DNA of 64,000 nucleotides from contig OZ241826.1 of NCBI GenBank assembly GCA_965202585.1, positions 70,432,001 to 70,496,000 on the forward strand, given 5' to 3'. A program made the translations under genes and the position numbers. This DNA comes from Thalia democratica (Eukaryota). The notes under the pieces are model-generated. The model saw only the letters and a program-made list of their open reading frames with translations, did no database searches and was not told where the DNA came from. Positions 39,542 to 64,000 of this stretch are shown here, in pieces (within the stretch, counting starts at the first letter, position 1; each line of letters opens with the position of its first letter).

Positions 39542-42500
39542 ATGGTAGCCGTTTGTCGCCCCCTGCACTGCCATGCCACCCGACTCGTCCTGCTGCTGAT
39601 GCTTATGGTGGCACCTCATGTGATTTTCGCCTACAAAAGAAAGTTTACTAAGTTGAAACCAGGTTTGTTTAGGGTTGTTTAATTTTGATTTTGAGTACGA
39701 TTTGAGCAAGAGCTTATTTTTTTAGTACAACTTGCATGATTAAAAGTAAAAAGGTATTTTAGTTTTTGCTGGTTTAGTAGTACATGCTAGTTAAATAAAA
39801 ATTCAACTTTATCAGAATATTATAAAAACAACACAAATTAAAACGTATATTTATGTTATAATATCTGATCAGCAAAAAATAAGTAGTAAAACTTACGTCT
39901 GTTAACGCTTAAAATATACTTTTTACTTAAAAATTACTTGAGCATCAAATGTTACATTTTAAAAATTATAGTACTTTTTGGAAAGTACTAGTTTACATTT
40001 AAATATTATAGTTTTATTTAGCTAGCGACTTCCAAAGTCGCATTTAAGCTGCGCATTAAAAAAGAGTAAAGGGTATGTTAATATTATAAAATTACTCGTT
40101 TAATATTTTTTTTGAGTTCTGTTATAGTTTTATCTAAATTAGTTTTAAAAGGTTTTAAGTTTAAACAAACATAATGTTGAAAATAACCATTTTATATTTC
40201 TTCACTAAGTTTTTTGTGCACAGTAAAAAAAATAAAAAAAGAACTTTTAGAAGCACTCTTTTTCAAGCTGTTTTAAAGTTTATTTATTTCAATTTCATCA
40301 ATAACAGACGGGTTAATTTCTACACCAGAGGCTTTGGAGCAAGGCCCAATACTGGTTTCCCGAAGAGTTTCCAAAACGTCATCAGAAATCGTCACCGAAG
40401 CTTGGAACAAGACAACAAGTCATGGCACAAGCAACGTAAGAAATCAACCTTTGAACAGGCGAAGACTGACAAAGTCTAGGAAAAAAGTTCAAAAGTCTAG
40501 TTATGACCTTGGTCGTCAAGTGCCGCGAAATAAAATCAGGCGGAAGTATCGTCCAAAGCACGGAAGAACCAGAATACGAAGGAAGCGAAAAACATTCGCC
40601 GGGTTCAATCTGCTGTGGGTCATATCGTCGAAGATCGACAAGAGCAGCGTGGAAACGCTTTCCACGATGTCAAGAAGACATTTTCGTCACAACCGGCAAA
40701 TCATCACTTTGAACTCGAAACTGCCGCGTCTGCTTTTGAGGCACGAGAGGCCTCAGCTGGACCTCGTGCCAGTTGCGGGAAGAAGAAACAGAGATGAGAA
40801 TAAAATTAAAAGTTTGGAAAACTCCGGTAGGACTGCAAAGAGACCCCGATCGAGAAAGAAAAGCAGCAGAAGCTTTGTGGAAGTTGAAACGGTGTTCAAA
40901 GTCGATAAAGCTCCAAAAGATGGGTTGGTTAATTTTAGCTTATAAAGTGTTATATCAATTGATCAAATAGTTTAATACTTTTTTAGAATAAGGATGCTAG
41001 CTGTCATATTAACAATCAGTTACGTAATGAACTTTAACAAGTTTTTTAAAACATGACAAAGTTAAACTCTCACTTTCAGGTACTTGTTCACTGCAAGGGC
41101 AGTAGACAGCAACCTGAAGCCGGAATCTTTTAAAAACGACGAAGCAATGACGTCATCAGTGGCCTCATGGTTCGGGGTGCACTGCAGAAGCACGGAAAGA
41201 GGGTTCGCGTTGAGGCTGGAATACCGTAACCCGAGACTCAAGCGAAAGTTCACTGAGGAACTGCATAGCGAAAGCTTTGTGCTTGATCGCTGGAACAAGT
41301 TAGTTGTTGTTTGAACTTTGCAAAATTTTCAACTAAAACTTTTTTTTACCTGCTGTATTAATTAGTTCTGTATACTCTTTACTATATTTTATTGACTTTA
41401 AGTTGGAATAATCCATTTAGCTTTAAGTAGAATTTAGATGCAAACGAATTTGTACACTAAAAGATTGATTGCTTTAACAAAAAAAAAGTAAAAGAATTTA
41501 ATAAATTCTTCCAATTTGTTTCATAGAAAAAGTCATAACTTTATTATGGTCTTCATTTTGATTTATTTATTTAAGTGTTTATGGTTGAAATAAGTAACAA
41601 AGCTAAAAACCACTAAATTTTATAACCAATTTATCTTAATCAGCTGATTTAACTACGTCACGATCACCTTTACGGGAGGTCTTTTTAAACAAAATGCTTT
41701 CATTTAACTGGCATAAGCCTAATTAAAACAAACTATCAAAAAATAAATTTCAATCAACCATTTTGTAAATGTTGATGATATCGCAGACTACGCTAAATGT
41801 ATTCTGTATTTATATTGTTCAGTCAAAACATCCATGTTTGTTTAACAAGTTGCTTCAAAAGTTTTAAAAAGGCCGATATCTTTTCAAAATCATTTCAAGT
41901 GAAGTCAAAACCGCACAGTAGTTAAATACATCCTTATATTGTCATGTAATAGCCGCTAGTACAAACAGTACGGTCACTAAAACGATAGTAAAACAATTGA
42001 GCTGCATTTCTTAAAAGCTCTCAATCAACATTTTATTGGAAGCTCGTCGTTTACCATGAAATTTGTTTGCCATTTCCTATATGCATCTCAAATTTAGTTT
42101 AATGCTTTGTTTTAGTAATCGTTAAGCGGGTGTGAAAATCTATAAACTTAGTATTTAAGCATTTGTAACAAGTTTTATTGTTCCGAAAAAAAATATTCTA
42201 TAAATAGTTTAATAAAAAAACTAAATTTTTTACCGGTTTGTTTAGCTAAACATGGTAAATTTTCTTAATGTTTTTAATCCGTAATCTCATTACATTAATT
42301 ATTAAAAAACTAAAATTTATAAGTTTTGACTTAAAAACATTTATTAATGTTCGTTTTTCGTTAACGGTTAGCACAAAATCCATCAAAAGTTCTACAAAAA
42401 AACCCTTTTATGCTTTACCCGACTATGAAGTACACACAAAAAATATTTACCTCCACACAACCGAACATTAAAAGGCCAAGCGCGCACCCAATATACATAC

Positions 42501-42950
42501 TTGCCGAGTGTTTGAACGACACTAAGCAATAACTTGCTTCAAAAAAACAACAACGACGGTAAACATCAGTTGACTTCAAAGCAATTTTGCTAAACAGATT
42601 GGCGATAAGGATTAATTTCAGCGCGAAAATCATTACTTATTGGATCAACTGCACCCCAAACACGGTGCAAATAAAGTTGTCACCGGAAAACACCACAACA
42701 GGCGAGCTGAAGTATTCTTACTACACAATTTTCAAGCTGCTGCAGTCTCAGGAAAGCTCACCCGACACGGCTAATGGCCAATCAAATATGCAGGTGAAAG
42801 TTTTATTTCGCTTTATTTTTTGAATATGTCTGTGCGCGTAAAACAGTGTATTTATTCTTTGTTGTGCACAGGTATCTTTGAGAACGCTCATAATCAGCGA
42901 CGGTGGGACAAACCAAGCTCCGAAGCAGTGCACTTCTATAATGAGCCGAA
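39542..42950 (+). CDS. Exons 1-5: signal peptide, R/K-rich propeptide, TSPN/laminin-G-like domain
   Basis: MVAVCRPLHCHATRLVLLLMLMVAPHVIFA signal peptide; GFNLL...; GYLFTA; LDRWNKLAIRIN...ITYWINC (the TSPN WHxLAxxV...LYxDC pattern); LRTLII...C. Confidence 0.7.
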
Positions 42951-45900
42951 GTAACTCACTTGTTTAGTTGAATTACGTAAAAATAAAAATTATCAAACTA
43001 AAATTATGAAGCAAAGCAAACTTGCAGCTTTTACAAAAATACAAACACTAAAATAAGCACGAACAAGAAAATACGACAACAGTAACTTACAAAAATATTA
43101 AACAAATCACACCAGGGTGTCCCCACGGCAAAGTGTTCATGGGCTGCGGTCCGAGCTGCGTGGTCACGTGCGCCTCGTTGGAAAACTTCAGCTACCAATC
43201 GTGCACGAGGTCGTGCGTGCAGGGCTGCCACTGCCCCTTCGGTCAGGTCATGCACCTGGGCGCGTGCACCCCCGTGAAGAACTGCCCCTGCGTCGTCATG
43301 AAACAGACTTTTCCGGCAAACTCGAGAACGGAGATAAATAATGAACAGTGGTGAGTATTTTTTTTTGTAGACTATAAAGATGTATGTTAGCTCTTACTTA
43401 GTCTACATGTTTAACTAAATTTTAAACAAATATGTAATATTATTTATATGTGGATAATATACATTGTATAGATGTGACTGAAACTTTTTAGCTACTAGTA
43501 ACAAAAAATGCTTTACTTAGAATGTGCATGTGTTCAAAGACATTTAGTTATAAAAGCTCACGATATATAACTATTTTAACATTTTTTTCGGAACCTTTTA
43601 ATACTTGTAAACAACTTTAAAAAATAACGGTGTACAAAATACATATTTTCTATACTATGGTGAGCCAAAGTATTTTTCATAATCTCATCAAGAATAAAAC
43701 ACAATTTTAGTTGTGTTTAAAAATTAATATGTTAAAAAATTAAATTTTTGTTCAAGTATTAAAAATTATAAATTTAAGTATTTAAATTTTTATGAAAATT
43801 GTTAACTAAATGTTGAATTTTTTTTGTAGTATTTACATTACTGGTATTTACACGAATTTCATTGAAATGCAAAACTAATGAGTATAAATGACGAGAAATT
43901 TTTAGAATGGGCTAAGTTAAAAACTAAAATCAATGGCGCGTAGAAAATTCCCTATTTCGAAAACTTTATTCACGTCAGTCAACAAGTGGAGTTATCATTA
44001 ACTTGAAGTTATTTACTGTCAATTTTTCTCATCCCCGGCACAAGTCAATGTTATTCCGGTTCAAAAATTCATGTTTTGCTGCACGCACACAAGCTCACAG
44101 TTGAACTGAAAACTTTATTTTTCACCAACGGCGGCTAATCTGGTTATAATTAACTTTTTCTGCTGAGAATTTTTCGACACGATATGTTTTGCATTGTCAG
44201 CTCGCGACAGTCATAAACTGTGTTTTCAATTTAGCACGTGCCTCAATGGGAGATGGAGTTGCTTTGCAGCAGCCAGAATACGTGAGGGACCGAGAAGCCA
44301 GCGAGTTAAGCTGCGTTCGAACCTGACGCTGTCGTGCAAAGTCATCGGCAGGCCGCTGCCCACCGTTAGATGGGCAACGCCGAAAGGTGTTAAATACAAC
44401 ACAAGTAAGTGTATATTTTTATTCTGTGTATAAATTTTTTCAGTTTTGTTGCAGTTGAAGTAGTTTAAACAAAAGTTTTTAAACTGAAAAGTGGTAAACT
44501 GGTATCTTTTTCTATACTGCTAATTATTTTTCAGTAAGAACACTAGTTTAAACTTACGTGAAACTTTACAAGATAATAACTGGTTACAATTTCAAAAATT
44601 TTTAAACCGCAGCTTTAACAAACGGTGGCCGCTTATCGCTGCTTCACGTTTGGCCGGTGGAAGAAAACTCGGGTGGAAATTACACATGCGTTGCGTCACG
44701 TGGTACATGGAGCATGAGCTCCTCCGCTCGAGTCAACGTCTTCGACTCTCCCAAAATCACCTCACTTCCTCAGACCGTTTCTGCGAAAATCGGGTAGACT
44801 AAACTGCTCATTTTTTTGCATAAAAACTCACTAAACTTTGTTTTATTTTTAAAGTCTTACTTGCAGTGTAAAGAATACGTAACCAACTAAACAAAATTTA
44901 ACTTGTGTAAAACTACATTTTAATCTTTATTGATTACAGTAGTGTACTTTGAAACAAAAACTTAAAACTTTTTGAAAACATTACCAATTAGAAATTCTCA
45001 ATACACACAGAGATCCAATTGTGGTGATCGACTGCCACTTGACCGGACTTCCACCGCCCAGGGTGTCGTGGGCCAGGACCGGCGGCCAGGGGTGGCCGGA
45101 AAACACCAGCTACGACTGGGTGGCGAAAGGCGTGGCTCGGCTCAAAATAACTAACGTAAGCGAACCAAACTTTAAAAAATAAAAAAAGATATTAATTCTT
45201 TTTTTTTCAGGTCAAACAGTCGAACGCAGGGGAGTATTGGTGCTACGGGAGCAACGGCGACAACAGCACCTCCAAATCGGTCGTCCTCCTTGTCCAGGTT
45301 CCTCCTCCGAACAGCCTCGCCTTCAGCAAGGCGCCCCAGGACATCTGCGTGAGGAAGGGAAACAGCGCAGTGTTCCCGTGCAAGGTGGGAATTCTTATTT
45401 ATATTTTATGTTAAGTAAGGTGGTTAAGAGCCTGGATTTTTTTTGTGAAAAGCTGAAAGTTTTCATCTTAGTTAACATGCACGTTATTTCAGCTTAATAA
45501 CCTTTAGGTTAGATTCTTAGATTTATTTTAAGCTTATACTGAAGTAAGCATATTTTGATCGCAAGCTTGAAACTTAAAATAATAGTTAAGATAAATAAAT
45601 CATCATATACCTTTACTTATAAGACCTGTCTTGTGTTAAGGCTTTATTAAAAATCTGTTCATATTAAATTTAAAAAAGTATTAAATTTATCAAGTATAAA
45701 AATACTTTTATCATAAGTATAAGTACAGTTTTGCAGACTTAAATTGAAAATTTTAAAGTTTTTATCATGAAGCAATTAAACTTTACATTCACGTAAATTT
45801 AACTAATTTTAATGAAAATGAGCAAATTAGCAAAGAAGAATAGCGTGTTATTTTATACTTGTGATTAATTTAAAATACTATATAAATAAGCTTTGTATGA

Positions 45901-48900
45901 CTAAAAAAATTAAGACTAAACTATGAAATAAAAAACTTAATCATTTTGCGAAAATAAAATATTAAATGTTTTTACACAAATAGAACAGTTTTAACACGCA
46001 AAAAAAATGCATATAAAATAAATTATAATATTTTAATATTCAGTAACTAACTAATATAGATGTAACAAATTTACCATTCTTTGCAATAAATAACTTGGTG
46101 GAAAAGCAAAAAAAAACGATGTTTAAAAAACATTAAACCGAAAGCGCCAAATTAAGCTCGAAAACATGTTACAGTGCAAATTTTAATCAGCCAACATTAA
46201 AGTTTTCTATCGGTGAAATGTGTTCGACAAACATTAAAATCTTGTTATAGTGTGCTGTGGTCGCAGTTTCTGCTCGAAAACAAAATATGGACACATCCTT
46301 ACAATTTACTCATAAAACTTAAGAGCATTAAATAATTATTTAATCCACTGTTTAGTAAACACGCGTAAGTTTTCTCATCTAGTAACCTACGACTGAGTTA
46401 TCGTTAGATTTTAATCGAATTCCGTCACGATGGTATATATTTGCTTTAAAATTATCATACTTTTTTACCACCCTGATTAAATCAATGCCTGTTGGACTAG
46501 ACGATAAAAACTACTGGATAGGTTAATTAATCATACACCCTTATTCGCTTTGTTTTTTCAACACAATGGTGAATCTGTCAAATACGCGCTAAAATCAAGA
46601 TATCGTGCAGATAAGGTAGATAATTACCCTAGCATTTTCAGGTACCGAATATAGAAGTTTGGATACACTAAACTAAATTTTGATACCAAACAAACATATA
46701 ATTACTTAATCTTTAACTTTAATGGTTTAAGAAGTGTTTCGGAACGACTTTGTCAGATTAGAACACTTTGAGTTTACTTAAATCTAATGTCTGCATCCTA
46801 TCTACCAACACATGCTATCAAAAGTTTTAAGACGGATTTAACACAAATTTTTCAATTATTTTTTGTAAGAAAGCTGCAATTAAATAAAAGTTTTTTTTTT
46901 TTAAATATATCAAATTGAAAACTATAAATAGCTATTTTGTATTTTTTTGATAATTTTTTTTTTTCATTATTTATATGTTTAAAATTTTTTAAATTAGATA
47001 TTTTGTTTTCGAAATTGTAAAAATTATTTAATAAACACCTTTCTTTTTTCATTTGAATGTATTTTGATAAAGCTTTTTATCAAAAAATAGTCTAAAAACA
47101 ATAACTGTTGTATGCTTAACATTCATGTACATTTTAAAAATTTGAAAAATGCTGTTTGAAAGGTCAGTATAAACGTTTTCGCTTAAAGGATTAAGTTCTT
47201 TAGCAATATTCAACAAAACAGTTAGAATGAACATGTCTTATCAAACAATCAAATTTGGCATAAATCGCTGTGGTTTTAATTTTAATCATGTTTAGTTTAA
47301 CATAAAATTCACAGCTTTTGTGAAGTTTATTGCTGTATGATTTTTTATTTAACTTATTTTGTAGAATTATAAAACGAAGTTTAAATATTTGATTCAAAAA
47401 TAAAACATTTTATTTGTTTTATAGTTAAGGTTGCTCTTAATTAAAACGTGAATACTTCTATTCAAAAATAAACTAATTTTCTAGTAAATGGTGTTTGTTT
47501 TGTGAAATATAAGCTTAAGAAAAGTTGAGTGTTGAAACGACAATGAATGTCTTAATTATGTTTATGTTGTTTTTAATAATCTTTAATTATTTCAAAATTG
47601 ATATTTACTTAAGCAATACATACAACTATACCGAACTAAAAGCCTTTAGAAAGTATGTTCTTTCTATAAACATTTTATTTATTTTTGCTTTATATAAGCG
47701 GTAATTGAATTATTTATTTACAGGTAATTGGTCACAGCTTGGAAACGGTAGTCACGTGGCTGAAGGACGGCTTTCCATTGGACGTCAGCTCTCGTCAGCT
47801 TCGCAAGTACCGCTACAAACTGATCGTGCGAAAAGTGACGAGAGAAAACGCGGGAATCTACACATGCCGGGTCACGAGCGTCAACAACCAAACGATGAAC
47901 GCGCAGGGAAGGCTCATGATAAAAGGTCGGTGTTCGTGTCGTAACAACGCCGATTGCATGACAATAACAAATAAAATGTTTAAAATTAGATTACATCTGG
48001 TTTAGTTGAAGAAGGATTTTGTATAAATTGCTAACAAGTGTAAGTTTTGACTATAAGAAAAGGGTGATTAATAGAACATTAGATGTTAAAAAAAGTAATT
48101 TAAGAAAGGTTAACTTAATATAGGTAAAACTTATTTAAAAAGAAATTGTTATAAACACTTTAGTGTATCTTTTTTTAAAACAGAAAGAACTTTTTAACAA
48201 AATTTTTATGAACTTATATAAAATAAACACAAACTGCAAAATTAGAACGAATTCTATTTTTTTAATTATGTTTGTTAATATTTTGTAAGTAATAAAAACT
48301 TTGAAAAAAACAAAAACGAACGTAAAAACATGTAACTAGTAAAATAAATCTTTTGTTTCCAATACTATAGTATTTTAGTAATTTTGTTATTTGTTTTTGA
48401 TTGCTACAACGATAACCAAATTTCGAACTTTCGTATATTTCAAGCTGTCAAAAATGATGAATTGCGCTTGAAATTTATCACAGAGACTAACTCTACCCCT
48501 TTTCTACCTTTACGTAGAAAGCCACCGACTAATTTTAATTTATTTCGTTTCTATGGGTGGTCTGCTGACCGCACCATCACTCAGTAACTCGTAGCGACAA
48601 GCTAAGAACTTAACGTGCTTTTAATTTTCTACCTGGTAAACAGACAGGGCAATAAAATTAACCATAAGCTTTTATAAGTTTGTTAGTTTTTTAATACTCA
48701 GCCATTTATTTTTTCAAATAAAATTCCAAATTTTGTGTTATATCTAATTAAGTGTCATTTATAAACAAACTTTAGGTAAAATGCAAACGTGGTCTTCATG
48801 GTCGCAATGCAGTGCGACTTGTGGCGAAGGTGTCATGACCAAAAGAAGAACTTGCACCGGAATTCCACCTAATTCGAAAACTTGCCACGGAAAGTTCGAA

Positions 48901-51900: not shown

Positions 51901-54900
51901 TGGATTGGAGGAGCAACGCTATTTGTCGTTAGTTTTTGTAAAGTAGCTACTTGCGTGATTTTTAATCTACTTCCGTCTGCGTTTGCGGACGCCAAGCAAA
52001 GGTGTGAACTTGTCAGAGGGCTGAGAACAACAAAGAATTTAAATATAAAGCGCCTGCAGCCAAAGTTGCCATGGCTTCCGTTTTAAAGTTAATTTACATT
52101 ATCAAGTCTTGATTAAAGTACAGATAATTTCCCGCAAAATGGTACAAAGCTTTTCCTACTCGGCTAATGACACAACTTCTGATTTTTAAACCAAATCTAC
52201 TACGTCTTTGTTTATTTTTTCAATGACGTAATCTTTCGAAAGTTTCTATTTGAATGAGAGTATTATAACTGACGGTATCGATAGGAAGAAGCAAGTGATT
52301 GTAATAACTTTTCGAAAAACTAAGTTTATAAGTAAAAGGTTTAACAAAAAAAATATTAAAAAAATTTAATACTATTACAACTTTTAGCGTACACATGCAG
52401 CGGCGGACGCGTTTACATGGAATGCGGACCGAAATGCACCCAGTACTGTGCCAGCGAGGTGCCGGGCAGGAAAATCTGCAACGCCAACAGCAGGTGCCTG
52501 CCGGGCTGCTACTGCCCGAAAGACTTGGTTTTTCACAAGGGAAAATGCATCAGCCACAAAGAGTGCCCTTGCAGCGAAGCCGGAGAAGAGTTTGAAAGAG
52601 TTAAGCTGTCAAACCTGAACTGCAGTCGCTGGTTAGTTGGCTGCGAATTAATTTTGTCATCACAGCGTCAGATAGTCTTTAAGTTACAAGCTGAAATCTA
52701 AAAAGCTGGATTAGGCTCGAGATTGAAATTTTCAGATTAACTTGTGCTTTTTCAAGGCAGAATTCGTCAGCGTAATTTAATGATTTTTTATCTCACTTGT
52801 ATAATTACATCTTTACGTGACAGTGCTAAGATCTGATAAACAAAACGGAAACAGTGTTTTAGATTTTTAATACAACTAAGACAAATATCAAGAGCTTACC
52901 ACTTACTTCTACAAAAACAAGTTGAAGTTTAGTAATTATCAACACAGGATTTGCGTTAACGGAGGCTGGAGGTGCACTTTTGACAAGGAGCTGTGCGAAT
53001 ATCCTCCGACTGTCGTAGACGGTCCGCACACCAAGGTGAGCTGAAAAATATTATCAGTTTTTTTTCTTCTTCCGCACAACACACGCTCGACAGTGTTTCA
53101 ATTTGCAAGCGTTTACGATGAAAGTAATTTAATTTTGCAAATCACTGCCAGCGATCTGAGAATGTATCGCTACATTAAGTGTAATCGTTTTGTTTTGGTT
53201 GCAATTTCAAAGCGCGTTCAGAGAATTACATATTGGGTTGCGGAAATGTAAACTTTAATGTTTGATAGGAACATTATTAGGTGCAAGAATTCTTAATACA
53301 ATGATATCATTGTATATTGTATACTTTAACTTAGTTTAAATGTTTTGATAGTTTTTATATAAATGCAATTAATTTATACAACCAATCACAAAGTTCAAAG
53401 TCTTTAAAATAGATCATCAAAACAACAAACTTTATTTCTCACGAAATTTCCGTTGATCAGTTTAAATATGTAATTACTTAAAATGCCGACTTTTAAGTTG
53501 TATGAGCTTGTAGGCGGCGATTACAAGAGAGTAAAAAATTGCGATTAATCCCTATTTATCACTGTTCGAGCGTAAATATTCAGCCGAAGTTCAACTATTA
53601 AAGAAAAAATTAATTATTTTCACCGTTGCGAAAATACCGCAATGAATTTTCACCACAGCGTCATTGCTATTTAGTGTCGACTTTTTCTTGAATTAAACGA
53701 TTTTGAGCATTTAAAGTTGTTATTTTTTATCAATAGAAAATATTTTGAAATTTAAAATAAGCTAACAGGGTTTAAATAAATTTAAAAGTCAAACTCAATT
53801 TATTTTTTTGCAAAATTTTATAAAATCATTCCTTTTTCTATACTTACCGGAAGTTTAAAATGGTTTTACTTTGAAAAACGTGCTAACATTTTTTATAAAC
53901 TAAATAGTAGCATAATTATTTTTAACGAATTGCAACCAAAATACTAAACAAACATTTCTTAGCTTAATATTTTAAATGTACAGTACCTCTTTAAAAGTTT
54001 ACAATACAAACACAAATTATTTAATTTAAAAAAAAGTTACTTTAAAGGTGGTTCCCCTCGGTGAAGCGGTAGAGCTATGCTGTCAGGTCGTCGGGGTTCC
54101 ACGGCCACAAGTCGAGTGGTACCACAACGGGGAAAGGATCGGAACAAACGATAAAAGTGGGGAATACCCCTACAAGAGCGTGGTGGACGAGCGCGGTAGA
54201 GAGAAGGAGTGGAACTCCACGTTGAGAGTGACCAAGGTGGGGAGTGAGGACACGGGGAGCTATGTTTGCAACGCCACCAACCGGTTGGGTTCCTACTTGT
54301 CCGAGCCCGCCTACATTAAAATACTCGGTAAATTGACGTTTATCAAAGTTAAAAATTTGAACTTAGTTATATACTAAAAGTTTGCTATAATTTTTTTTTC
54401 ATTTTTTAACAATATTTGAAAAATCTTTGGAACTTTTTATAAAACTCAAAATTATGAGCAAATAAAACTAAAGTATTTTATTTCAAATACGTTTAAGAAC
54501 TGTTAATTTCTTTTGAGTAACTTTGTACTAGCAAGAACATCTAAATTAATACGTCATAAAACATCTAACAGATCATGTGACATCCACATGCGACCCAAAA
54601 CCATCACAAAATATGATTCGTTTACCGCAAAATTGTTACGTTTTCAACAGTAGCAACGAAAAAGAAACCAATGGTACATTTTATTAGAAAAATAAAATTT
54701 TTTGTTTCTTTTAAAACTTTAAGTGTACTGAGATTAAAAAAGGGCATGATAAAAGATTCGAGCTTCAAAACTAGTCCTTATTTAACTTAGTACTTGTTTA
54801 AACAGTCGAATACTTATGAACAGAATCATTGCATATTTTTTAACTGTTTTAAAAATATTTGTTTGTTTAAAATTAATTTTGAAATGAAAAATAGTTTCTC

Positions 54901-57900
54901 AAAATAAATCAAAAAAATCTTAAACTATTTTAAAATAAACATTTTTTTTTACTTTTTATTGAAATTAAACCTTTTCAGTAATTCCTAGAAACTTTTTTAT
55001 AAATATCGTATAAGGAACAATTTTAAAACTTTTTAGCAGTAAATAATACAGTAGATACGATTGTTTAATTTTTTTTACAACAGGTCTAAGAACTATAAAA
55101 TCATTAAAAAAGTTATATTAGTTAGCCTTGTTCACAATAAAAACTCAAAATAAGAAGCAAACTTTTATCGGAAGTAGTTTTAAGACATTGAATTTTTTTA
55201 AATAGCCAAGTTTTTATTTAAAAGGCGATAAATAAGTATAACTTTTTGTTTAGTTAGTTAAACTTAAGCAAGTTTAGCAACCAACTTTTGAGATCAATTT
55301 CAAACACAATAAACAAAAACATGTGTTTGAAAATTTTGCTAACAAAACTTCGAACAGAAAAGTCGAGCGTGGTGGACCTGGGCAAGTGCTGCGGCAGTCC
55401 GTGCCACCCGCACAACCAAGCGCGCCGAACCACCACGCGTCGCCATGACGACCGGCTGTTGTGCGACAAGTCCCGCTCCTGCTGCCAGCAGAGCGTGACG
55501 AGGCGGTTGAAGGTCACGTGCGAGCTGCCGCACGTCGCCGAAACGGTCGGGGTGTTCGAGCTGCTGCAGGTGCTCAAGTGCGGGTGCCTCGTGTGCGAGT
55601 CGGGACCGACCGTCGTCGAGGGGTCGATCACTTCCAATCAAAATGGTGAGGTTTTTGTAATTTGTGTGAAAATGTGTTTTTTTCAATAGTTGAAAGTATA
55701 ATAGTATCTAAGTGAGTTTTATTCATTTTCTTAAAGTCAATACTTTTTTAATAAGAAAGAAAACTTCCCTTTAATAAAATAAGTATTTAAAAGTACATGT
55801 CTAATAGAATCGTTCTTACAAATTAAAAAGTAAAAGGACGCCACCAAAAAAAAAATAGCACAACTTTTTGACCACATTTAATGAGAAAATAGTTCGAATT
55901 TACAAACAGTTCATATGGTAAGAACTTTCTTTTGATTAATCAAAAAGAGCTTTCAATTTCACATAAATATATTACAAGGTATTTTATTCCAATTTCTAGG
56001 GTCGCGCTGTCTACTTTATCAGTTTAATACGCATAAATTCATTTCGAAGTTCATACAATAAATTCCAGTGTAAACACGTTTCAAGCGTTTAGTGGAGTTT
56101 AAGCAAAGGACTTTTTATAGTAGCGATAGTAATCTGGTTAGCGGTTGGCACACAGACCACTTAATTGAACATTTATTTGTGTCGCTACAGTCGGGATGCG
56201 AATTAGGAAGGCTATAAATACACTCACTACTCTAAAGTTAAACTTTTGAAAATTATCTTGTTCTTTATAGAAAAGTATGTCAATTTTTGATTAACGGTCT
56301 TACATCAAATTATAACCAGTGTAACTGATACCCAGCGACGAAAAGACTTTAAGTGCTCATACCACGATGGTATCCTGTTACACTTATCAGAAACTTAATC
56401 TGCAACAATAAACTTTTTATTTGTTTGTGTCTAACCTTTCGCTTTATGCGAAGGCTATTCTTCATTTTTACAATAAGCCGATCGTTAGAGCTTGTGAAAT
56501 TTTAAGCCATTAGCAGAGTTTTAAAAAGCGGTTGCGAATAATTCAATCCGCACCATTAATTTTTGATACATTGTCTAATAAACTTTGCTGTTAGTTTTAA
56601 TTTTTTTCATAATTTCTGCTTATTCACACGAACAGTGAGAATTTTTTTCAGTGCAATTGTCGTTTAAATCTTCAGAACGTGCTCAGCCCATTTTCTTCTA
56701 ATCTTCACGTATGCGGGCAATTACGGCGTTTTGCCGTTTGTATTTTGATATGAAAACCAGGGCAGGTGGCAAACTTATTCATGTCTAGTAATAAGAGATT
56801 AACCTACTCCCTTTAAATCCTGAGTCGTTAAGATTTGACGACATTCATAAATATTTCCGCTTTAGTATTCCATTAAGTTGTTTGCTCTTTTGCTGTGTTT
56901 TTGAATTCCAAAGTCTTTTTATAGAAAGCTTCTCTTTAAAACAAAGTTGTTGTAACTGTAGTACTACTAAACTTTAATATTTTGAAAAAGGCGGTAAAAT
57001 AACTTTTGTAGAAAAACTTTAATGCATAATTTCTGCACATATTTCTACCTTAAAAAGTTGTTTTATATCAAAACTATAAACATTTTAAAACAAAGTTTTA
57101 AAACAAAAAACGTTTTAAAAAACTTTTCTTTAATTTTAGTAGTTTTTTATATTTTTTATTTAATGCCATACATTAAGATATAAATAAAGCTAAATATTTT
57201 ACTTTAATGGTACAACATCTTTAGATAGGGTTATTTTAAACGTTCGGAATTTAAAATGTACGGTACTAAAAACTAAGTACAAATACGACTTTTTACAAAT
57301 CAAAACAAGTTTAAAACCAAGGGTTGACTTGTAAAACTTTTTATAGCGCATTAGTCATGGTCTCAAGTCAAAACATCTCTGCAACGTTAAAATGTGTAAG
57401 TAATGCGTTTATAACTTATCGCGAAGCATGCTTGAAATGGCTAAATCGAAAACAAAAGCGGCAAAAATAACCTCAAAAAGGCCATAATAGCTCATCAAAA
57501 TTAGCTTAAGCAAGCGTTTGGATGCTGTCACTTGGTATTTTAGCACCATTGACGACAGCAGATAGATAATAATTGCACTTGTACGGGTTAACTGTGATAT
57601 GTTTAACTAATGGACGCCTCTTAAAGTTAAATTTGTTGGGTTATACAAAAATATTTTTTTCTTTTTAGTTTGTAATAGCTCAAGAAATGTGGTTGAAACT
57701 TATACGCGCTAATTTACAATTTCTGTTCTGTTCTAGTCAAATAAACTATTTGTTTGCAAACAGAGTAAACGTTAATTTTTTTTTTCTTTAGGGGAAGCCA
57801 TTAAGCAAGCCAAGCTGACCTACCGGGGCCGCACCATCGGCTACACCACCGGCACCGGGTCGTTCCGCATCAAAATTGACCATCTTCCCCCGGACACCAG

Positions 57901-60900
57901 CTGGATCAGCCTGAAGGTCGCCGACGTCATATACAAGAAGTTCACGACCACCGTGGCGAAAGTGGCCGTGGTTCCGGGTAAGTCGACCCTGCAGATGATT
58001 TACATGGACCCGGCAAGGATCACGGTCACCTTTTCCGCGTCGAAAGGGCTCAATTATATATTCAAGTTAGATTTTTATTAACTAAATTAAAGTTATGAGA
58101 TTTTAGAAGACGTTGGGAGATATTAAAAAATAAAACTAAAGATTGCCAAATTGAAGTATTATAACATCATAACAGAAATTATTTAAAAAACAGTTTATTT
58201 TAAAAGTATTAAGTATCAATTTGAAAAAATTGTTACTCGTTAACTGTTTCAAACTTAAATTAATGGTTTTTAACAAAAACAAAGCAAAAGTTTTTGGTTT
58301 AAATTTGTTAAACTTTTGTTTAAATACTATGCAAATTCTGTTGGGTTTTAGAAAGCAATAACCATGAGAAAAATACTTTTAAACATGTAAGGCGGTAAAA
58401 ATGCGTGATATTGAAAATACAAACTACGAAACCACATTTCTTTTGGTAGCTTGTTTCTCAGTGATTTCACCATGTACTTGTTGTTACTGCTTTCACTGTC
58501 TGACATGATTTACCTTCATAATAAAACAAAAAGAAAGCAATCAAAAAGCATGTTGTGAGCAGCGGTTTTCAATTAAGTACGGTGTTAAAAATCAAACAAC
58601 TTCCGTTTTTATCGACCATTACAGGTTTACTATTACAGTGTAAACATCACCACATGACAATTTTAGCAATACAAAAAGCAAATTCTTTTAGGCGAGTTTG
58701 AATTATTAAAGGTTTTTTTTAAACAATAAAATCTAATAAATTAACGAAACTAAAACAGACACTAAATAAGTATATATTTAGTAGAGTGGTTAGCAATTGA
58801 AGAGGATAAAAATAAAAACTACTCAAGTAATAAAAATCAGCAAGTTTAGTTTTATAAAAATAAACTTTTTTATAAATTATTTACGTTAGCTCATATTGCG
58901 AAACCTACGAGTATCACGTTTACCTTTTATAAACAATCATAAATTTTCATAAATGTCATAAAAATAATCTTTTAATTCGACACCAACTCCCGCCAGGCCT
59001 TCTCACGGCTATTCTCACCGAATTCGCCTCACAGTCAACCCGAACTCACTCATGCGCGACCGATCCAAGTCGGCGTACCGCGGAACGGTCACTGCCATTA
59101 TGACGTTGCTCGACAAGAGAAACGTCACCAGGAACTCAAGCAGCGAGTACAGCAGACCGATGCATTTGTCCCCGACACCCATGGCAATAAACGTGAATGG
59201 GGAAGAAAGTTTGCTGAACCCTTCAAGTAAGTTTTTGAATCAACAGTTAATATATATTTTCACATTTTTTTAACAATAACAAGATATATTAAACTGCTGA
59301 TTTCGTTTAAATTTTTTGTTTACGGTTATTTGAGCTGTCATTTTGGTAGTAATATTAAGTTTAGTTCAAAATAATTAAAAAATCTAAAACACACTTTTTA
59401 AGTGTTAAGATATCATAAATCAAAAAAAATTGTTACTTATAATCAAAGAAAATTTCTGGTTACCACTTTAATAAAATATCAAAGAGAAAAAATATTATTA
59501 TTGCTTAGCAGATGTCATATCTTTGACAGATATTTGTTTATCTCGAATATCAAATTTCTTGTTTAAACCTTCTATTTTAATCCTTTAATAAAAATATAAT
59601 ATAGACATAATAAATCAGACTGCATTACTCGTGATGGATAATTTTTTATTTTAACGTTTCTCTATTATCTTGACTCTTATACTTTTACCTTTTAAGCTTA
59701 AAAAAAAAGGTTGTTTGCTGCGAAAAAAAGCTACATTAAACTTACAATTAAAAACAAGTTCTACTATCACCTTAATTTTCAATTAAAGTATTTAGTATTA
59801 CTGTTTGAACTTTTAGAGATGGAATAGGTTACAAAATATATAACTAATTCTGATCCTAAAACAGTTTTAATTAAAATCTAATTTATTAATATATATGTAT
59901 GAAAAAACTTAACACAAAATGAGCATACTTTTCTAATAATTCAACCGAGCTCTATTACTATCGTCAAAAACATTATAAAACATATAAACTTACATTTTGC
60001 ATTTAAGCTAATAAATAAACATACTGGTATACACTAACCAACTTTCTTACAAACACAGTCGTAATCTACGCAACATTTTTCACAAATCAAAGAAAATTGC
60101 TCGACCTGATACCCAACAACACGGCTGTGTTGAGCTTGAGCGCAGGTGGAATCCAATCAGACGTGAAACTGTGGTCTCTTGAGGAGTTCACCGGTAAGTG
60201 GAGGGAAAGCAAGAAACTCCTACAAGTCGTACCGAGAGTCACAAAGAGAGGAAAAAATGTGAGTTTTTTTGTGATTCATTTAAGTGTTTGTTAAGTTTTT
60301 TGAAAAATTAGTTTATAAAAAAAATAAAAATTACATATTTTGATTAAACAAATTAAAAGTTAAAGGTTTCGTTTTAAATAATGCAGTAAATTGTTTCAAG
60401 ACAAAAATCAATCTTTTTTTAATCTTTACTAAAATTAATGTAAATAAAACATAGCAAAAACTTTAAGAAAATAAAGTTCTCAACAAGTCATAAACATCTT
60501 TAGCTTACAATATAAATATGTATGTACAAATTTCGTTTCAACAACTCAAAAATAAGTGTTACTGTCAGCTATATTTCGTAATTTTTATTTCCCAGATGCT
60601 AATTGTCACTGCAAAAATAACGAGGTTCAACGTGGGCATCGCCTTGGCAACGAGCAAAACTCCCTGCTACTTGCGAGTCAAGGTGCTCAACAACCGCAAC
60701 GAGATAATTCCCAAGGTCATGGTGACGTACAAAACGGGGGTGGCCAACTCGACCTCCCTCGCCGGGTTCCAGTCGCACACCGACCACGTCACCACCTCTC
60801 ACACCCCCATCAACGGAATGTGCATTCCCACCGGTTGCCACGAGAACGGCGTGATTTCCGCCTACCACCCGGGCGAGGACTTGAGACTCCTGAAACCCGA

Positions 60901-61684
60901 AGTTCCGCCCGAAGGCATGGGCCAGGTTGTTGAGGATTGGATAAGCACGTTCAACCTGAAAAGCTCAGAGAATTCCTCGGTGTCTTCGTACTTCCGAACC
61001 AAGCAGGAGTGCGATGAGACGAAGGCGGGGCTGATGACGTATACCTTCCGTGACGTCGTCGGCGATCAGCTGCAAGCCGTGCCGCTGATGGCAGAGATGG
61101 GCAGCTGGAACGTGAACGTGCAGAACCACGTTATAAGAACGATCGCCTCGGCCTCCCCGTCCACGGCCGACTTTGTAAAATTCTGCCACTTCAAGCTAAA
61201 ACTGAAGCTGAAACCGACCTTCTTTCGACGCAACAACGTGACGCAGCCGCTGGCCGCGCTCGAGTCGGTCACCTTCACGGACAACGACACCTTTGAAGGC
61301 GACCAGAGCAACCAGCAGATGAGCATTCTCGGGTGGCGGCACATCACCATTGACTCGCCGCGCCGTGATGACGTCATCACAGGCGACGGTTCCGTCATCC
61401 GGCTGCTCTGCGTCGACTACAAGTGCAGCAACAGCCGGGTGTACGAGCGAAAGCGGCCGTCCGTTTACGTCAAGGTGATCCACCTCCAGGACTCCAGGGA
61501 CGAACCGGATTGCGAGTTCACGCCCAGCAGTCCCGACGGGTACGGGGGAATACCCGGTCGCAAGAACGGTGGCTACATCAAGTTCAAGTCTTCGATGTAC
61601 GACGGCAGGTCGCTGCTGGAGTCGAAGCAAGCGTGCGCAGCCTCCGGAAGCAAGAACTATTCTGCCACCTTCGTTTGCAAGTAG
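39542..61684 (+). CDS. CILP-like: Large secreted mosaic ECM protein, 1993 aa: SP - basic region - TSPN/LamG - TIL - Ig x3 - TSP1 - VWD - C8 - TIL - Ig - CILP-like C-terminal half
   Basis: 25 GT-AG exons with compatible phases: 39542-39662, 40329-40923, 41080-41298, 42598-42793, 42872-42950, 43116-43350, 44235-44404, 44613-44793, 45011-45155, 45211-45384, 47724-47925, 48776-48934, 49500-49615, 50615-50800, 50988-51217, 51402-51585, 51831-51927, 52388-52631, 52948-53035, 54048-54327, 55358-55645, 57792-58065, 58997-59226, 60059-60258, 60596-61684. They sum to 5982 nt = 1993 aa plus TAG. Confidence 0.88.
43116..47925 (+). CDS. Exons 6-11: TIL plus short Cys module and three I-set Ig domains
   Basis: CPHGKVFMGCGPSCVVTCASL...CVQGCHCPFG; LTLSCKVIGRPLPTVRW...GNYTC; IDCHLTGLPPPRVSW...AGEYWC; AVFPCKVIG...VTWLKDG...NAGIYTC. 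Confidence 0.88.
48554..48562 (-). promoter_or_regulatory. Perfect GLI consensus site in intron 11
   Basis: TGGGTGGTC = GACCACCCA on the minus strand, inside a small GC island (48518-48605). Confidence 0.45.
48776..53035 (+). CDS. Exons 12-19: TSP1 repeat, then a VWD-C8-TIL assembly
   Basis: [98 protein letters not shown]...DWRSNAICP; YMECGPKC...CLPGCYCP. Confidence 0.92.
54048..61684 (+). CDS. Exons 20-25: Ig domain and CILP-type C-terminal region
   Basis: Ig (ELCCQVVGVPRPQVEWYHNG...DTGSYVCNATNRLG); DLGKC..CC...C..KCGCLVC...VEGSIT..NGEAI; GTVTAIMTLLDKRN; VKLWSLEEFTGKWRE; CYLRVKV; NGMCIPTGC; LCVDYKCS; ATFVCK*. These motifs are collinear with cartilage intermediate layer proteins as I recall them. 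Confidence 0.85.
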
Positions 61685-61934
61685 TTTGTCATGTTTATAT
61701 GCTGAAACCTGCTGGATCGGGCTTTTTTTGAGGATTTTTTTCGTGATGCGTTTTAATTTTTGTTGTTTTGAGTAATATGTTTTTGAAGGCGGATAAACAC
61801 TAAATCATGTTAGATTTTATTGTTGTGACAACTTTGAACTATTTTTAATTTAAAAAAGATTATAAGTACTATGTTTTAAATTTGTATCTTAAAATACTAC
61901 TTTTATTATTTTATACTTAAACAACTTCAAACTT

Positions 61935-61940
61935 AATAAA
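61935..61940 (+). terminator. Likely polyadenylation signal of the CILP-like gene
   Basis: First AATAAA after the stop at 61684, followed by T-rich tracts. Confidence 0.4.
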
Positions 61941-64000
61941 TAAATACAAATTATATAAATCACCTTTCTCTAAGTTTTTTAGTTGCTTCTTTATGTTTTT
62001 TACTTGTGTTTAAAAAAAAAATATTTATAACAATAAAAAATTCGATTTGAAAAACCTACATAGCTTTTAGTTTTTAATTTTATATTATTGTTAAATATAG
62101 TATTAACTTTTAATCAGCATAAAAAAAAGCTACAAAATTTTCGAAATTAATTTGTTTTTAATTACAAATCATGACATACTCAAAAAGTTTCTTACATCCT
62201 ATATATTTATTGCTATGAATGAACTTTTTTATCGAACCACAGCACCTTGTATGTAATATTTATTGCCTCTTATGATTTAGAACCTACTTCTAACTTCTTT
62301 TATTTTAAGCTAAAAGGCCATAGCTATTTTTATAAAACACTCTAGTTACACTTCTTTTATTAACCTTACATACACATAATTACAAACACAAACACTCATA
62401 GTTTTAATATTCAAAGAGTTTGTTGTACTCGTTTTGATATTGCTACACATACTACCTAGCTAATACTGCCTCCGTTTTCTTACCAGCATACATTCCAGCT
62501 AGTTGTGTTGAACTCTTGCTTGATTAAACTTGACAAGTAGTGTATTAAAGTTTTCGTGTGTGTTTTTTTTTAATTTTTTCGCAGTATTGTACTTTTGTAT
62601 TCAATAAAATTTAAAAACTGGTTAATGTTTAAAAAAATTATTGCTATTTTAATAAAGTAGATAAAACTTTATAAACGACTTTTAAAATTAAAGCTAAATA
62701 AGTATATATACATTTATATGTTATACTTATATGCTTAGATTTGTGAAAAATATAATATTGAAGTTAACTTTATAAAAAGTATTTTTCTTTACACAACTTT
62801 CTACTATCGACGTTCTTAAAAACTTTATTTTAGAAATTTAACATCTATTTTAGTTTAAGTATTTTTTATAAGGTAGCACTTACAGTATTGTATAAAAAGT
62901 TTAAAGAAACTATTTGAAATCATTATGGCGGCTACGGTTTTATATGACCACTAATTAAAAAGGTTTAATTATGTAACTTCCATTCTAAAAACATAGTTTG
63001 CATAGTTTAGAATTTTTTATATAACTTTATTTGCTTTCGCTATAAAACTTTTGACTGTTGGAATTTAAAAAACTTTGTTATAAATCTAAACAATTTTTTA
63101 TCTTGCTTTTGTCAAATACTTTACTTCAAGCATCTGAAGCTTTTGGAAACTTAAATTTTAAACATAATCTAGAGTCATTTTTAGTTAATTTGGTCCTAAA
63201 ACATATTAATAGATTTATATACGAATTATTTTTTGTACTCTCAGTTGTTTAGGTTATTTATTATAATATAATAATTGTATATTTAATTTATTTACATTTT
63301 TTTATTTTCAAAACTTAAAAGTATACTGTGTTAATTATCTACATAGGATTGTTCAAATATGTTCGAAAATACATTAAAAAAGTTAGAAATGTGTTCTATA
63401 TAATGAAACATTTTCAGCTAGAAAAGTTTAGCTTTAAGTTAGAAATTCACCATTAAAACTAAACATGTTAAAGTTATTAGTAAATGAAAACTAACAATAA
63501 TGAGTTATTTCATTTCTAACAAAAACAGTTGTAAATGGCCTTTATCTTATATAACTAAAATAACATTTTACTAAATAATAGTATATATCAAAAATTGGTA
63601 AAAGTTTAAATTATTCAGAAATTTTATATTTTAATATAAAAAACAACAGTATTGACACAAAAACTAATCTAATGAGCCAGGATTTTATTTTCTAATTGTT
63701 ATGTTCAAGTTCAATTTGAAAAATATAAAGTAAGTCTTAAACCTATTAAACAATTTAACAAATAACTATATTCATATTATTAAAATAGTATGAGAAAAAT
63801 TTGTGATATTTTTTATTTATCTTTTGTAAAACTCTGAAACTTTGAAAACAATTATCTTTTTATTTTAAAACAAACTGTTTTTCCTGTTTTAAAAATAAAA
63901 AAGTCTGCAGAAATTTAAACTTGTTAAATTTTAAAACTAAATATTTTTTTCCTATGTAGGCAAACTTACGGATAAAAATGTTTAAAAACAATATTTACAA

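What the first reader, a model, noticed from the sequence alone, without database searches (positions are those of the whole stretch)
39542..61684. 1993-aa mosaic joining a CILP C-terminal half to a gel-forming (VWD-C8-TIL) module, TSPN and four Ig domains
Seen: a phase-consistent 25-exon ORF with the domain order SP-basic-TSPN-TIL-Ig3-TSP1-VWD-C8-TIL-Ig-CILP. Established: vertebrate CILP1/2 have WxxW-TSP1-CarboxypepD_reg-Ig N-termini with no VWD, TIL or TSPN; VWD-C8-TIL is the polymerisation unit of mucins, vWF, otogelin and SCO-spondin; TSPN heads collagens and thrombospondins. I know of no described protein with this combination. Inference: a lineage-specific, exon-shuffled matrix protein that may polymerise (tunic, fibre or statolith-membrane type).
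Basis: partly seen in the sequence, partly recalled or inferred. Interest (0 to 1): 0.75.

Follow-up and report, generated by a model that had tools for sequence, protein, structure and literature searches.

The report
Tunicate matrix gene with CILP tail
A real, expressed 26-exon gene of a pelagic tunicate encodes a roughly 2,026-residue secreted matrix protein that joins a VWF/mucin-type assembly unit and a probable cystine knot to the tail of the cartilage protein CILP. It is a conserved but undescribed domain combination, and an ordinary case of exon shuffling.

Summary
Spliced RNA contigs from two independent data sets join exons 19 through 25 directly, so the VWD/TIL/Ig part and the CILP-like part are one transcript. 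The gene therefore has 26 exons and encodes 2,026 aa.

- **Confirmed by Pfam on single exons:** TIL x2, four Ig domains, TSP1, VWD, C8.
- **CILP-like tail:** the last exon has no Pfam hit. A low-confidence model of it finds all five Swiss-Prot CILP1/CILP2 entries first (E 5e-9 to 2e-8, CILP1 residues 748-1119).
- **Probable cystine knot:** the missed exon plus the next one carry 11 Cys conserved in four species, in a CTCK-like order. Fold matches are weak but nearly all are cystine-knot proteins.
- **TSPN:** no support from any tool.
- **Conservation:** exons 6-26 lie in the same order in a metagenome contig, and the VWD-C8-TIL-Ig-knot-CILP core lies in the same order in two more distant unidentified contigs.

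The scan earlier found a related mosaic (Sushi/EGF-VWD-C8-TIL-TILa with a CILP tail, s1-301154) on another piece of this genome. My verdict is a new variant of a known kind of matrix protein. Any dimer or polymer function is inferred, not shown.

The parts
39542..39662 (+). Exon 1: start codon and signal-peptide-like hydrophobic segment (residues about 10-33)
   Evidence: Gene model. It is the only hydrophobic stretch in the protein. The donor position is uncertain, since searches gave alternatives. The upstream length of X5 record 21 leaves about 80 nt of 5' UTR.
40308..40923 (+). Exon 2: Cys-free, strongly basic region (residues 41-245, net charge +37) with RX[KR]R motifs at residues 129 and 131
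   Evidence: No Pfam family. Rests on the model alone; a split version of this exon cannot be excluded.
41080..41298 (+).
   Evidence: Model only. No Pfam hit. Only weak plant-LRRNT-like noise in the Atlas and PDB sequence searches.
42622..42793 (+). Exon 4: second part of the claimed TSPN stretch
   Evidence: Model only. No Pfam hit at E<=10. No PDB relative.
42872..42950 (+). Exon 5: end of the claimed TSPN stretch
   Evidence: Model only. No Pfam hit.
43116..43350 (+). Exon 6: TIL domain 1
   Evidence: PF01826, E 4.2e-9. 43% identical to the counterpart exon in L002.
44235..44404 (+). Exon 7: cysteine motif that follows TIL (C-x-C-x-x-G-x-W-x-C), then the first half of Ig1
   Evidence: Ig_3 and I-set at E 4e-5 to 6e-5. 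Conserved in L002 and L006.
44613..44793 (+). Exon 8: second half of Ig1 and start of Ig2
   Evidence: Ig_2 and ig at E 1e-3 to 6e-3. Conserved in L002 and L006.
45011..45155 (+). Exon 9: Ig2, middle part
   Evidence: Ig_3 at E 4e-4. 62% identical in L002.
45211..45384 (+). Exon 10: end of Ig2 and start of Ig3
   Evidence: ig at E 4e-3. 63% identical in L002.
47724..47925 (+). Exon 11: Ig3
   Evidence: I-set at E 4e-7. Conserved in L002 and L006.
48776..48934 (+). Exon 12: thrombospondin type 1 repeat (WSSW, CSATCG)
   Evidence: PF00090 at E 1.9e-11. 66-67% identical in L002 and L006. Motifs.
49500..49615 (+). Exon 13: VWD, first third. It reads GDSN where an acid-labile GDPH could stand.
   Evidence: PF00094 at E 1e-11, profile positions 1-43. 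78% identical in L002.
50615..50800 (+). Exon 14: VWD, middle third
   Evidence: PF00094 at E 1.8e-3, profile positions 43-97. Splice sites read. 54% identical in L002.
50988..51217 (+). Exon 15: VWD, last third (GLCGN motif, no CGLC)
   Evidence: PF00094 at E 3.9e-11, profile positions 103-156. Conserved in L002, L006 and L014.
51402..51585 (+). Exon 16: linker and first half of C8
   Evidence: PF08742 at E 1.8e-7, profile positions 2-33.
51831..51927 (+). Exon 17: second half of C8
   Evidence: PF08742 at E 7e-7, profile positions 39-67. 71-72% identical in L002 and L014.
52388..52631 (+). Exon 18: TIL domain 2
   Evidence: PF01826 at E 5.4e-9. 62% identical in L002.
52948..53035 (+). Exon 19: cysteine motif that follows TIL 2
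   Evidence: Conserved in L002, L006 and L008. Its 3' end (53003-53032) is joined to exon 20 in the RNA contigs of X1 and X5.
54048..54327 (+). Exon 20: Ig4, a whole domain in one exon
   Evidence: Ig_3 at E 2.5e-15 and I-set at E 4.4e-15. Present in RNA contigs X1 record 1 and X5 record 21.
54572..54673 (+).
   Evidence: It is a piece of the spliced X1 contig, and its 3' end is joined to exon 22 in X5. AG..GT borders and an open frame. Conserved in L002, L006 and L008.
55358..55645 (+). Exon 22: core of the CTCK-like module, with nine Cys invariant in four species (C-x-G-x-P-C, CC, C-x-C-x-x-C)
57792..58065 (+). Exon 23: beta-sandwich domain resembling the Pfam CILP domain
   Evidence: PF23591 at E 0.03-0.07 here and E 0.005-0.023 in the counterpart exons of L002, L006 and L008. 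All are below the 27-bit cut-off. Spliced in X1 and X5.
58997..59226 (+). Exon 24: conserved stretch with no named family
   Evidence: The joint 58065->58997 (GT..AG) is seen in X1 and X5. 57% identical in L002. No Pfam hit.
60059..60258 (+). Exon 25: conserved stretch ending in a dibasic site (R-V-T-K-R | G-K-N), a candidate proprotein-convertase site
   Evidence: The RNA contigs run from 59226 into 60059-60088. The basic patch is conserved, and L002 reads R-T-K-R. P0007 runs across this exon junction.
60596..61684 (+). Exon 26: 362-aa C-terminal module like CILP1 residues 748-1119, then the stop codon
   Evidence: Foldseek against Swiss-Prot puts five CILP entries first at E 5e-9 to 1.7e-8. 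AlphaFold DB clusters. phmmer finds only eight real relatives (one of the nine hits is a bacterial repeat protein) among 1.84 billion cluster representatives. No Pfam hit.
61685..62572 (+). 3' UTR, about 888 nt; the end is approximate
   Evidence: X5 record 24 is 2,969 nt long against 2,081 nt of exons 22-26. ATTAAA signals lie at 62523 and 62544.

Best explanation
This is one complete, transcribed gene for a large secreted extracellular-matrix glycoprotein (26 exons, about 2,026 aa, 86 Cys, 24 N-x-S/T sites).

Domain order: signal peptide; strongly basic Cys-free region; an unassigned roughly 160-aa stretch; TIL; Ig x3; TSP1; VWD-C8-TIL (one VWF/mucin-type D assembly); Ig; an 11-Cys cystine-knot-like module; a CILP-type beta-sandwich; a dibasic cleavage site; and a roughly 360-aa CILP C-terminal module.

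I read it as a tunicate relative of the CILP family. It shares TSP1, Ig, a beta-sandwich and the tail with CILP, and carries a D assembly and a cystine knot inside it.

Inferred mechanism:
- The protein is secreted.
- It pairs tail-to-tail through disulfides of the cystine-knot module, as VWF and mucins do.
- The D assembly, Ig and TSP1 modules bind other matrix components, and the basic region binds polyanions.
- A proprotein convertase may cut off the CILP-like tail, at the place where (from memory) CILP1 is cut.

Shown here: the exons, their splicing into one transcript, the named domains, and conservation of the architecture. Inferred: secretion, dimerisation, cleavage and the matrix role.
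For: - **Gene model:** reproduced.
- **Splicing:** the spliced RNA contigs of X1 (a marine metatranscriptome, about 96-99% identical) and X5 join exons 19-20-21-22-23-24-25 exactly at the modelled borders.
- **Transcript length:** the two X5 contigs (4,069 and 2,969 nt) add up to the modelled mRNA, with about 80 nt of 5' UTR and about 888 nt of 3' UTR.
- **Pfam domains:**
- **Same exon order elsewhere:** L002 for exons 6-26, L006 for Ig x3 through the tail, and L008/L014 for VWD through the tail.
- **CILP tail:** all five Swiss-Prot CILP entries rank first, four orders of magnitude ahead of the next hit. PF23591 is weak in all four species.
- **Cystine knot:** 11 conserved Cys, and fold rows dominated by sclerostin, VEGF, norrin, DAN-family and VWF CK structures.
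- **Secretion features:** a hydrophobic N-terminus and no other hydrophobic segment.
- **Cleavage site:** a conserved dibasic patch, R-T-K-R in L002.
Against: - The two structure models are poor (mean pLDDT 55 each).
- TM-scores to CILP are 0.26-0.28 and identity is 12-16%.
- phmmer and a profile search found no vertebrate CILP.
- PF23591 never reaches its cut-off.
- The knot-like module lies inside the protein, not at its C-terminus as in VWF and mucins.
- There is only one D assembly, no CGLC motif and no PTS domain, so long polymers are not expected.
- The self-pairing test gave no answer.
- Exons 1-5 have no conservation or junction evidence.
- The tissue of expression is unknown.
Confidence: 0.72

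Rival explanations
1. Two neighbouring genes, a TIL/Ig/TSP1/VWD gene and a separate CILP-like gene, were merged by the reader.
For: The CILP-like exons lie behind 1-2 kb introns. The last exon alone is what public gene callers report (P0001-P0006).
Against: One RNA contig (X1 record 1, 2,085 nt) runs from about 800 nt upstream of exon 20 through exons 20-24 into exon 25. X5 contigs show the same joints. The exon order is kept in three other organisms.
Confidence: 0.02
2. The tail is not CILP kin. It is a run of generic carboxypeptidase-regulatory or prealbumin-like beta-sandwiches, and the CILP matches are fold-level coincidence.
For: No sequence search reaches vertebrate CILP. The ESM Atlas shape search gives only generic CarboxypepD_reg and SpaA sandwiches. 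The model is poor.
Against: All five CILP entries among 550,129 Swiss-Prot models rank first, over about 340 residues, and about 10^4 better than the generic sandwiches. The top three AlphaFold DB clusters include an entry named for the CILP1/2 beta-sandwich domain and proteins matched at their C-terminal part. PF23591 recurs in four species.
Confidence: 0.12
3. It is a soluble growth-factor modulator rather than a structural, self-associating matrix protein. It would bind TGF-beta or BMP-type ligands through TSP1, the knot-like module (as DAN-family antagonists do) or the single VWD-C8-TIL (as BMPER does).
For: There is a single D assembly, as in BMPER/crossveinless-2. The nearest fold rows include DAN-family antagonists, sclerostin and norrin. 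From memory, CILP1 binds TGF-beta1. There is no CGLC motif and no PTS domain.
Against: No VWC domains were found in any exon. The 11-Cys pattern with CC fits the CTCK type better than the DAN type (the comparison pattern is from memory). No functional data exist either way.
Confidence: 0.2

Closest known systems
Vertebrate CILP1 / CILP2 (cartilage intermediate layer proteins)
   Same: The C-terminal roughly 360 aa match CILP1 residues 748-1119 and CILP2 residues 732-1111 at the fold level. A weak PF23591 beta-sandwich lies upstream. TSP1 and an Ig domain precede the tail in the same order. A basic cleavage-type site lies just before the tail; the CILP1 cut near residue 725 is from memory.
   Different: There is no WxxW domain. 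A VWD-C8-TIL assembly lies between TSP1 and Ig, and a cystine-knot-like module between Ig and the sandwich. There is an extra TIL, three extra Ig domains and a basic N-terminal region. Sequence identity is only 12-16%, and sequence searches do not detect CILP.
VWF, gel-forming mucins, otogelin, SCO-spondin (VWD-C8-TIL assemblies with a C-terminal cystine knot)
   Same: It has a VWD-C8-TIL unit followed by the TIL-associated Cys motif. It has an 11-Cys module with a CTCK-like order.
   Different: It has one D assembly instead of three or four. It has no CGLC motif, no PTS or mucin domain, and no VWC or B domains. The knot-like module is internal and is followed by about 600 aa.
BMPER / crossveinless-2 (VWC x5 - VWD - C8 - TIL)
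   Same: It is a secreted protein with a single VWD-C8-TIL unit.
   Different: It has no VWC repeats. It has no GDPH autocleavage motif; the site reads GDSN.
Paralogue in the same genome (earlier finding s1-301154: Sushi/EGF array - VWD - C8 - TIL - TILa - CILP tail)
   Same: According to that note, it also has a VWD-C8-TIL unit placed upstream of a CILP-like tail.
   Different: Its N-terminal modules differ (Sushi/EGF rather than TIL/Ig/TSP1). It is too diverged for my searches of this genome with the tail or the knot exon to find it, so I did not compare the two directly.

Membership tests
CILP family | C-terminal module homologous to CILP1 residues about 725-1184 | tested here: met
   Foldseek against Swiss-Prot places CILP1 (mouse, human, pig) and CILP2 (mouse, human) at ranks 1-5. 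E is 5.3e-9 to 1.7e-8, and query residues 20-361 align to CILP1 748-1119. Caveats: model pLDDT is 55, TM is 0.26-0.28, and there is no sequence-level hit.
CILP family | Pfam PF23591 (CILP beta-sandwich domain) above its gathering score | tested here: inconclusive
   Scores are 13.6-17.3 bits against a 27-bit cut-off. The hit falls on the same profile region in the window, L002, L006 and L008. A search of the own genome with PF23591 found nothing.
CILP family | N-terminal Mucin2_WxxW domain | tested here: not met
   No exon gives a WxxW-family Pfam hit. The only W-x-x-W is the WSSW of the TSP1 repeat. Exon 1 was not scanned.
CILP family | TSP1 repeat and Ig domain upstream of the tail | tested here: met
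   TSP_1 at E 1.9e-11 and Ig4 at E 2.5e-15. They are separated here by VWD-C8-TIL.
CILP family | Cleavage of the precursor at a basic site in front of the C-terminal part | not testable with these tools
   The sequence shows R-V-T-K-R|G four residues before the last exon, and R-T-K-R in L002. Actual cleavage needs protein work.
VWF/mucin-type D assembly | VWD, C8 and TIL in that order | tested here: met
   PF00094 in three consecutive exons covers profile positions 1-156. PF08742 in two exons and PF01826 follow.
VWF / gel-forming mucins | Several D assemblies, with CGLC motifs in the propeptide assemblies | tested here: not met
   There is one VWD only, and no CGLC anywhere in the 2,026 aa.
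VWF / gel-forming mucins | C-terminal cystine knot (CTCK) | tested here: inconclusive
Gel-forming mucins | Pro/Thr/Ser-rich O-glycosylated (PTS) domain | tested here: not met
   No such region exists. The only low-complexity region is basic, at K+R 26%, S 11%, T 7% and P 5%.
TSPN / LamG-like N-terminal domain | Recognisable TSPN or laminin-G domain in exons 3-5 | tested here: inconclusive
   No Pfam family on exons 3, 4 or 5. No usable Atlas hit. No PDB relative. The domain is split over three exons and could not be submitted as one spliced sequence.
BMPER / crossveinless-2 | VWC repeats and a GDPH cleavage motif in VWD | tested here: not met
   No VWC hit in any exon. The site reads GDSN.

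The most novel reading that the evidence does not exclude
The cassette VWD-C8-TIL-Ig-cystine knot-sandwich-CILP tail may be an old chordate, or older, form of CILP. Vertebrate CILP would then have arisen from it by loss of the assembly modules. In thaliacean-type tunicates the protein would be a disulfide-linked structural component of a secreted sheet or fibre, such as the feeding net, tunic or a sensory-organ membrane. That would give the functionally obscure CILP tail its first tractable context.
Probability: 0.12. Interest if true: 0.6.

Novelty: new variant of a known kind. Interest (0 to 1): 0.4.

Why it matters
The CILP C-terminal half has no known fold family, no solved structure and no clear function. 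Here the same module sits in one transcript behind a VWF/mucin-type assembly unit and a probable dimerising cystine knot, and the arrangement is kept in several organisms. That suggests the tail works within covalently assembled matrix and offers a non-vertebrate system in which to test it. It also documents a conserved matrix-protein family with no annotated full-length member among 1.84 billion cluster representatives. Beyond that, it is a normal product of exon shuffling among extracellular modules, of which this genome has several.

Tried and rejected
- **Automatic gene model:** Both were corrected by hand using Pfam and L002.
- **Pfam on the tail:** nothing for the last exon or for its orthologues P0002, P0004, P0005 and P0006.
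- **Sequence searches with the tail:** phmmer against PDB gave only noise. phmmer against 1.84 billion representatives and a profile search against 5.8 billion proteins found no named CILP and no full-length protein. The second search is limited to proteins of about 0.55-1.75 times the query length.
- **ESM Atlas:** the feature search had no usable hit for the tail. The shape search gave only generic sandwiches.
- **Own genome:** searches with the tail, its profile, P0005, P0006, PF23591 and the knot-exon profile found only this locus. The paralogue of s1-301154 could therefore not be compared.
- **Contig look-up:** P0007 is not on record.
- **TSPN:** no support. The weak plant LRRNT-like similarity of exon 3 is taken as chance.
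- **Self-pairing of the knot exon with complex prediction:** no answer (score 0.02). This is not evidence either way.
- **Literature:** no paper links CILP with tunicates or VWD. The endostyle search gave nothing specific.
- **Not done:** the spliced 2,026-aa protein could not be submitted whole to any tool, because it has no reference. All domain tests were therefore made exon by exon.

Full report
**Observation**

The window is AT-rich (about 25% GC between genes) with GC-richer blocks between 39.5 and 61.7 kb. Stop-free segments on the + strand carry obvious extracellular-domain sequence.

A splice-aware dynamic programme trained on these segments was corrected by hand where it skipped two VWD exons or added micro-exons. 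It gives 25 GT-AG exons from 39542 to 61684, 5,979 nt, in one frame of 1,992 codons plus stop.

**One transcript, and a missed exon**

A 6-kb stretch (54040-60039) was laid against four public runs.

- X1 is a contig of a marine metatranscriptome (2,085 nt, about 96-99% identical). It consists of the pieces 54045-54326, 54571-54672, 55357-55643, 57791-58065 and 58997-59226.
- Its loose ends map exactly to 53003-53032 (the end of exon 19) and to 60059-60088 (the start of the next-to-last exon).
- X5 is a second run, from the organism that also holds the genomic DNA. Its contig of 2,969 nt has the same joints. A second X5 contig of 4,069 nt carries exon 20 at positions 3697-3978.
- The roughly 3,700 nt upstream of exon 20 match the 3,618 nt of modelled CDS plus about 80 nt of leader. 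The 2,969-nt contig leaves about 888 nt of 3' UTR, ending just after ATTAAA signals at 62523 and 62544.

The VWD/TIL/Ig part and the CILP-like part are therefore one mRNA, and the two-gene alternative fails.

With AG..GT borders at 54572-54673 it is 102 nt long, keeps the frame and adds 34 aa. Its 3' end is joined to the next exon in X5 as well. The gene has 26 exons and encodes 2,026 aa.

**Conservation**

phmmer with the last exon against 1.84 billion cluster representatives found nine proteins. Eight are ORF-sized pieces that mostly start at the same exon border. The ninth (P0008) is a bacterial repeat protein.

Their contigs show the same gene elsewhere.

- **L002** (13 kb, a metagenome contig) has exons 6-26 in the same order and with the same borders, at 30-78% amino-acid identity. 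It includes the new exon.
- **L006** has Ig x3, TSP1, VWD, C8, TIL, Ig, the Cys-rich module and the tail.
- **L008/L014** has VWD, C8, TIL, Ig, the Cys-rich module and the tail.

The organisms are not identified. In this genome the tail is single-copy at the similarity my searches can detect.

**Domains**

Pfam on single exons confirms:

| Domain | Evidence |
|---|---|
| TIL x2 | E 4.2e-9 and 5.4e-9 |
| VWD | three exons covering profile positions 1-156 |
| C8 | two exons |
| TSP1 | E 1.9e-11 |
| Ig x4 | one single-exon domain, three split across exons |

Each TIL is followed by a C-x-C-x-x-G-x-W-x-C motif.

Other features of the 2,026-aa protein:

- The N-terminus is hydrophobic, and there is no other hydrophobic segment.
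- Residues 41-245 are Cys-free and carry a net charge of +37.
- There are 86 Cys and 24 N-x-S/T sites.
- There is no CGLC, RGD or PTS region.
- The VWD reads GDSN where GDPH could stand.

The TSPN call for exons 3-5 found no support in Pfam, the Atlas or PDB sequence searches. The domain is split over three exons and could not be tested as one piece, so it remains open.

**The CILP-like tail**

The last exon has no Pfam hit. An AlphaFold model built on nine sequences is poor (pLDDT 55).

Even so, Foldseek against 550,129 Swiss-Prot models returns CILP1 (mouse, human, pig) and CILP2 (mouse, human) as ranks 1-5. E is 5e-9 to 2e-8 over about 340 residues, aligned to CILP1 748-1119. The next hits are generic pilin or prealbumin-type sandwiches at E 2e-4 or worse.

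Among AlphaFold DB clusters, the top three include an entry named for the CILP1/2 beta-sandwich domain, and entries of 1,073 and 910 aa matched in their C-terminal part.

Three exons upstream of the last exon, PF23591 (the CILP domain) hits weakly (13.6-17.3 bits, cut-off 27). It hits the same profile region in all four species.

Identity to CILP is only 12-16%, and HMMER searches do not reach it. I put the kinship at about 85%.

A dibasic site (R-V-T-K-R|G, and R-T-K-R in L002) lies four residues before the tail. By the Foldseek register this is near CILP1 residue 725, where I recall the CILP1 precursor is cut. That recollection was not checked here.

**The cysteine module**

The new exon and the following one carry 11 Cys conserved in all four species. 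Nine invariant Cys lie in exon 22 and two in exon 21. Their order is C...C...C-x-G-x-P-C...C...CC...C...C-x-C-x-x-C.

From memory, this is the count and order of the VWF/mucin C-terminal cystine knot, with small differences in spacing.

- Only exon 22 could be folded (pLDDT 55, one long hairpin).
- No Foldseek match is significant (best E 0.39).
- Nearly all of the top 50 rows are cystine-knot proteins: sclerostin, VEGF and PDGF, glycoprotein hormones, norrin, DAN-family proteins and the VWF CK domain.
- Pfam and PDB sequence searches are blank.
- A self-pairing prediction gave no answer.

I put a cystine-knot fold at about 70%.

**Interpretation**

This is a secreted mosaic matrix protein. 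It shares TSP1, Ig, a sandwich domain and the tail with CILP, and has a single VWF-type D assembly and a probable cystine knot inserted.

With one D assembly and no CGLC motif, long VWF-like polymers are not expected. A disulfide dimer through the knot is the more defensible guess. A role as a soluble ligand modulator cannot be excluded.

Literature searches found no description of this architecture. An earlier finding of this scan (s1-301154) reports a paralogous VWD-C8-TIL plus CILP-tail gene on another piece of this genome, and s1-317378 reports a further WxxW/VWD mosaic. The combination therefore recurs here and is a product of ordinary module shuffling.

**Verdict**

The gene is real and expressed, and the architecture is conserved and undescribed. 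It is a new variant of a known kind and of moderate interest.

Noticed in passing
window 6820-7215 (- strand): A GC-rich open frame of 132 aa matches the PARP catalytic domain (PF00644, E 2.5e-7). It is probably an exon of an unrelated minus-strand gene about 32 kb upstream.
   Followed up: partly
window 27467-28180 (+ strand): A 238-aa open frame (49% GC) has a hydrophobic start and many Cys, and no Pfam family. It may be a single-exon secreted protein gene between the PARP-like gene and this one.
   Followed up: partly
protein P0003 (333 aa): It is a 43-49% identical copy of the last exon, filed at NCBI as a hypothetical protein of a Planctomycetota MAG. It starts at the same exon border, so it is most likely a eukaryotic contig binned into a bacterial genome.
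   Followed up: no
window 38800-39600: A GC-rich block (49% GC over 800 nt, locally 55-60%, CpG observed/expected 1.26) lies directly upstream of the start codon in an otherwise roughly 25% GC region. It looks like a promoter or leader island.
   Followed up: no
window 41066-41311 (exon 3): There is a weak resemblance to plant-type LRR N-terminal caps. phmmer gives E 0.0015 to phytosulfokine receptor residues 26-74, and the Atlas feature hits are LRRNT_2/LRR clusters scoring 0.75-0.89. I take it as chance, but it is the only similarity found for the claimed TSPN stretch.
   Followed up: partly
window 54040-59230, run X1: The metatranscriptome contig differs from the window at 29 exon positions, 14 of them A>G and 6 T>C. 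Most likely this is population or sibling-species variation. No DNA from the same individual was available to rule out RNA editing.
   Followed up: no
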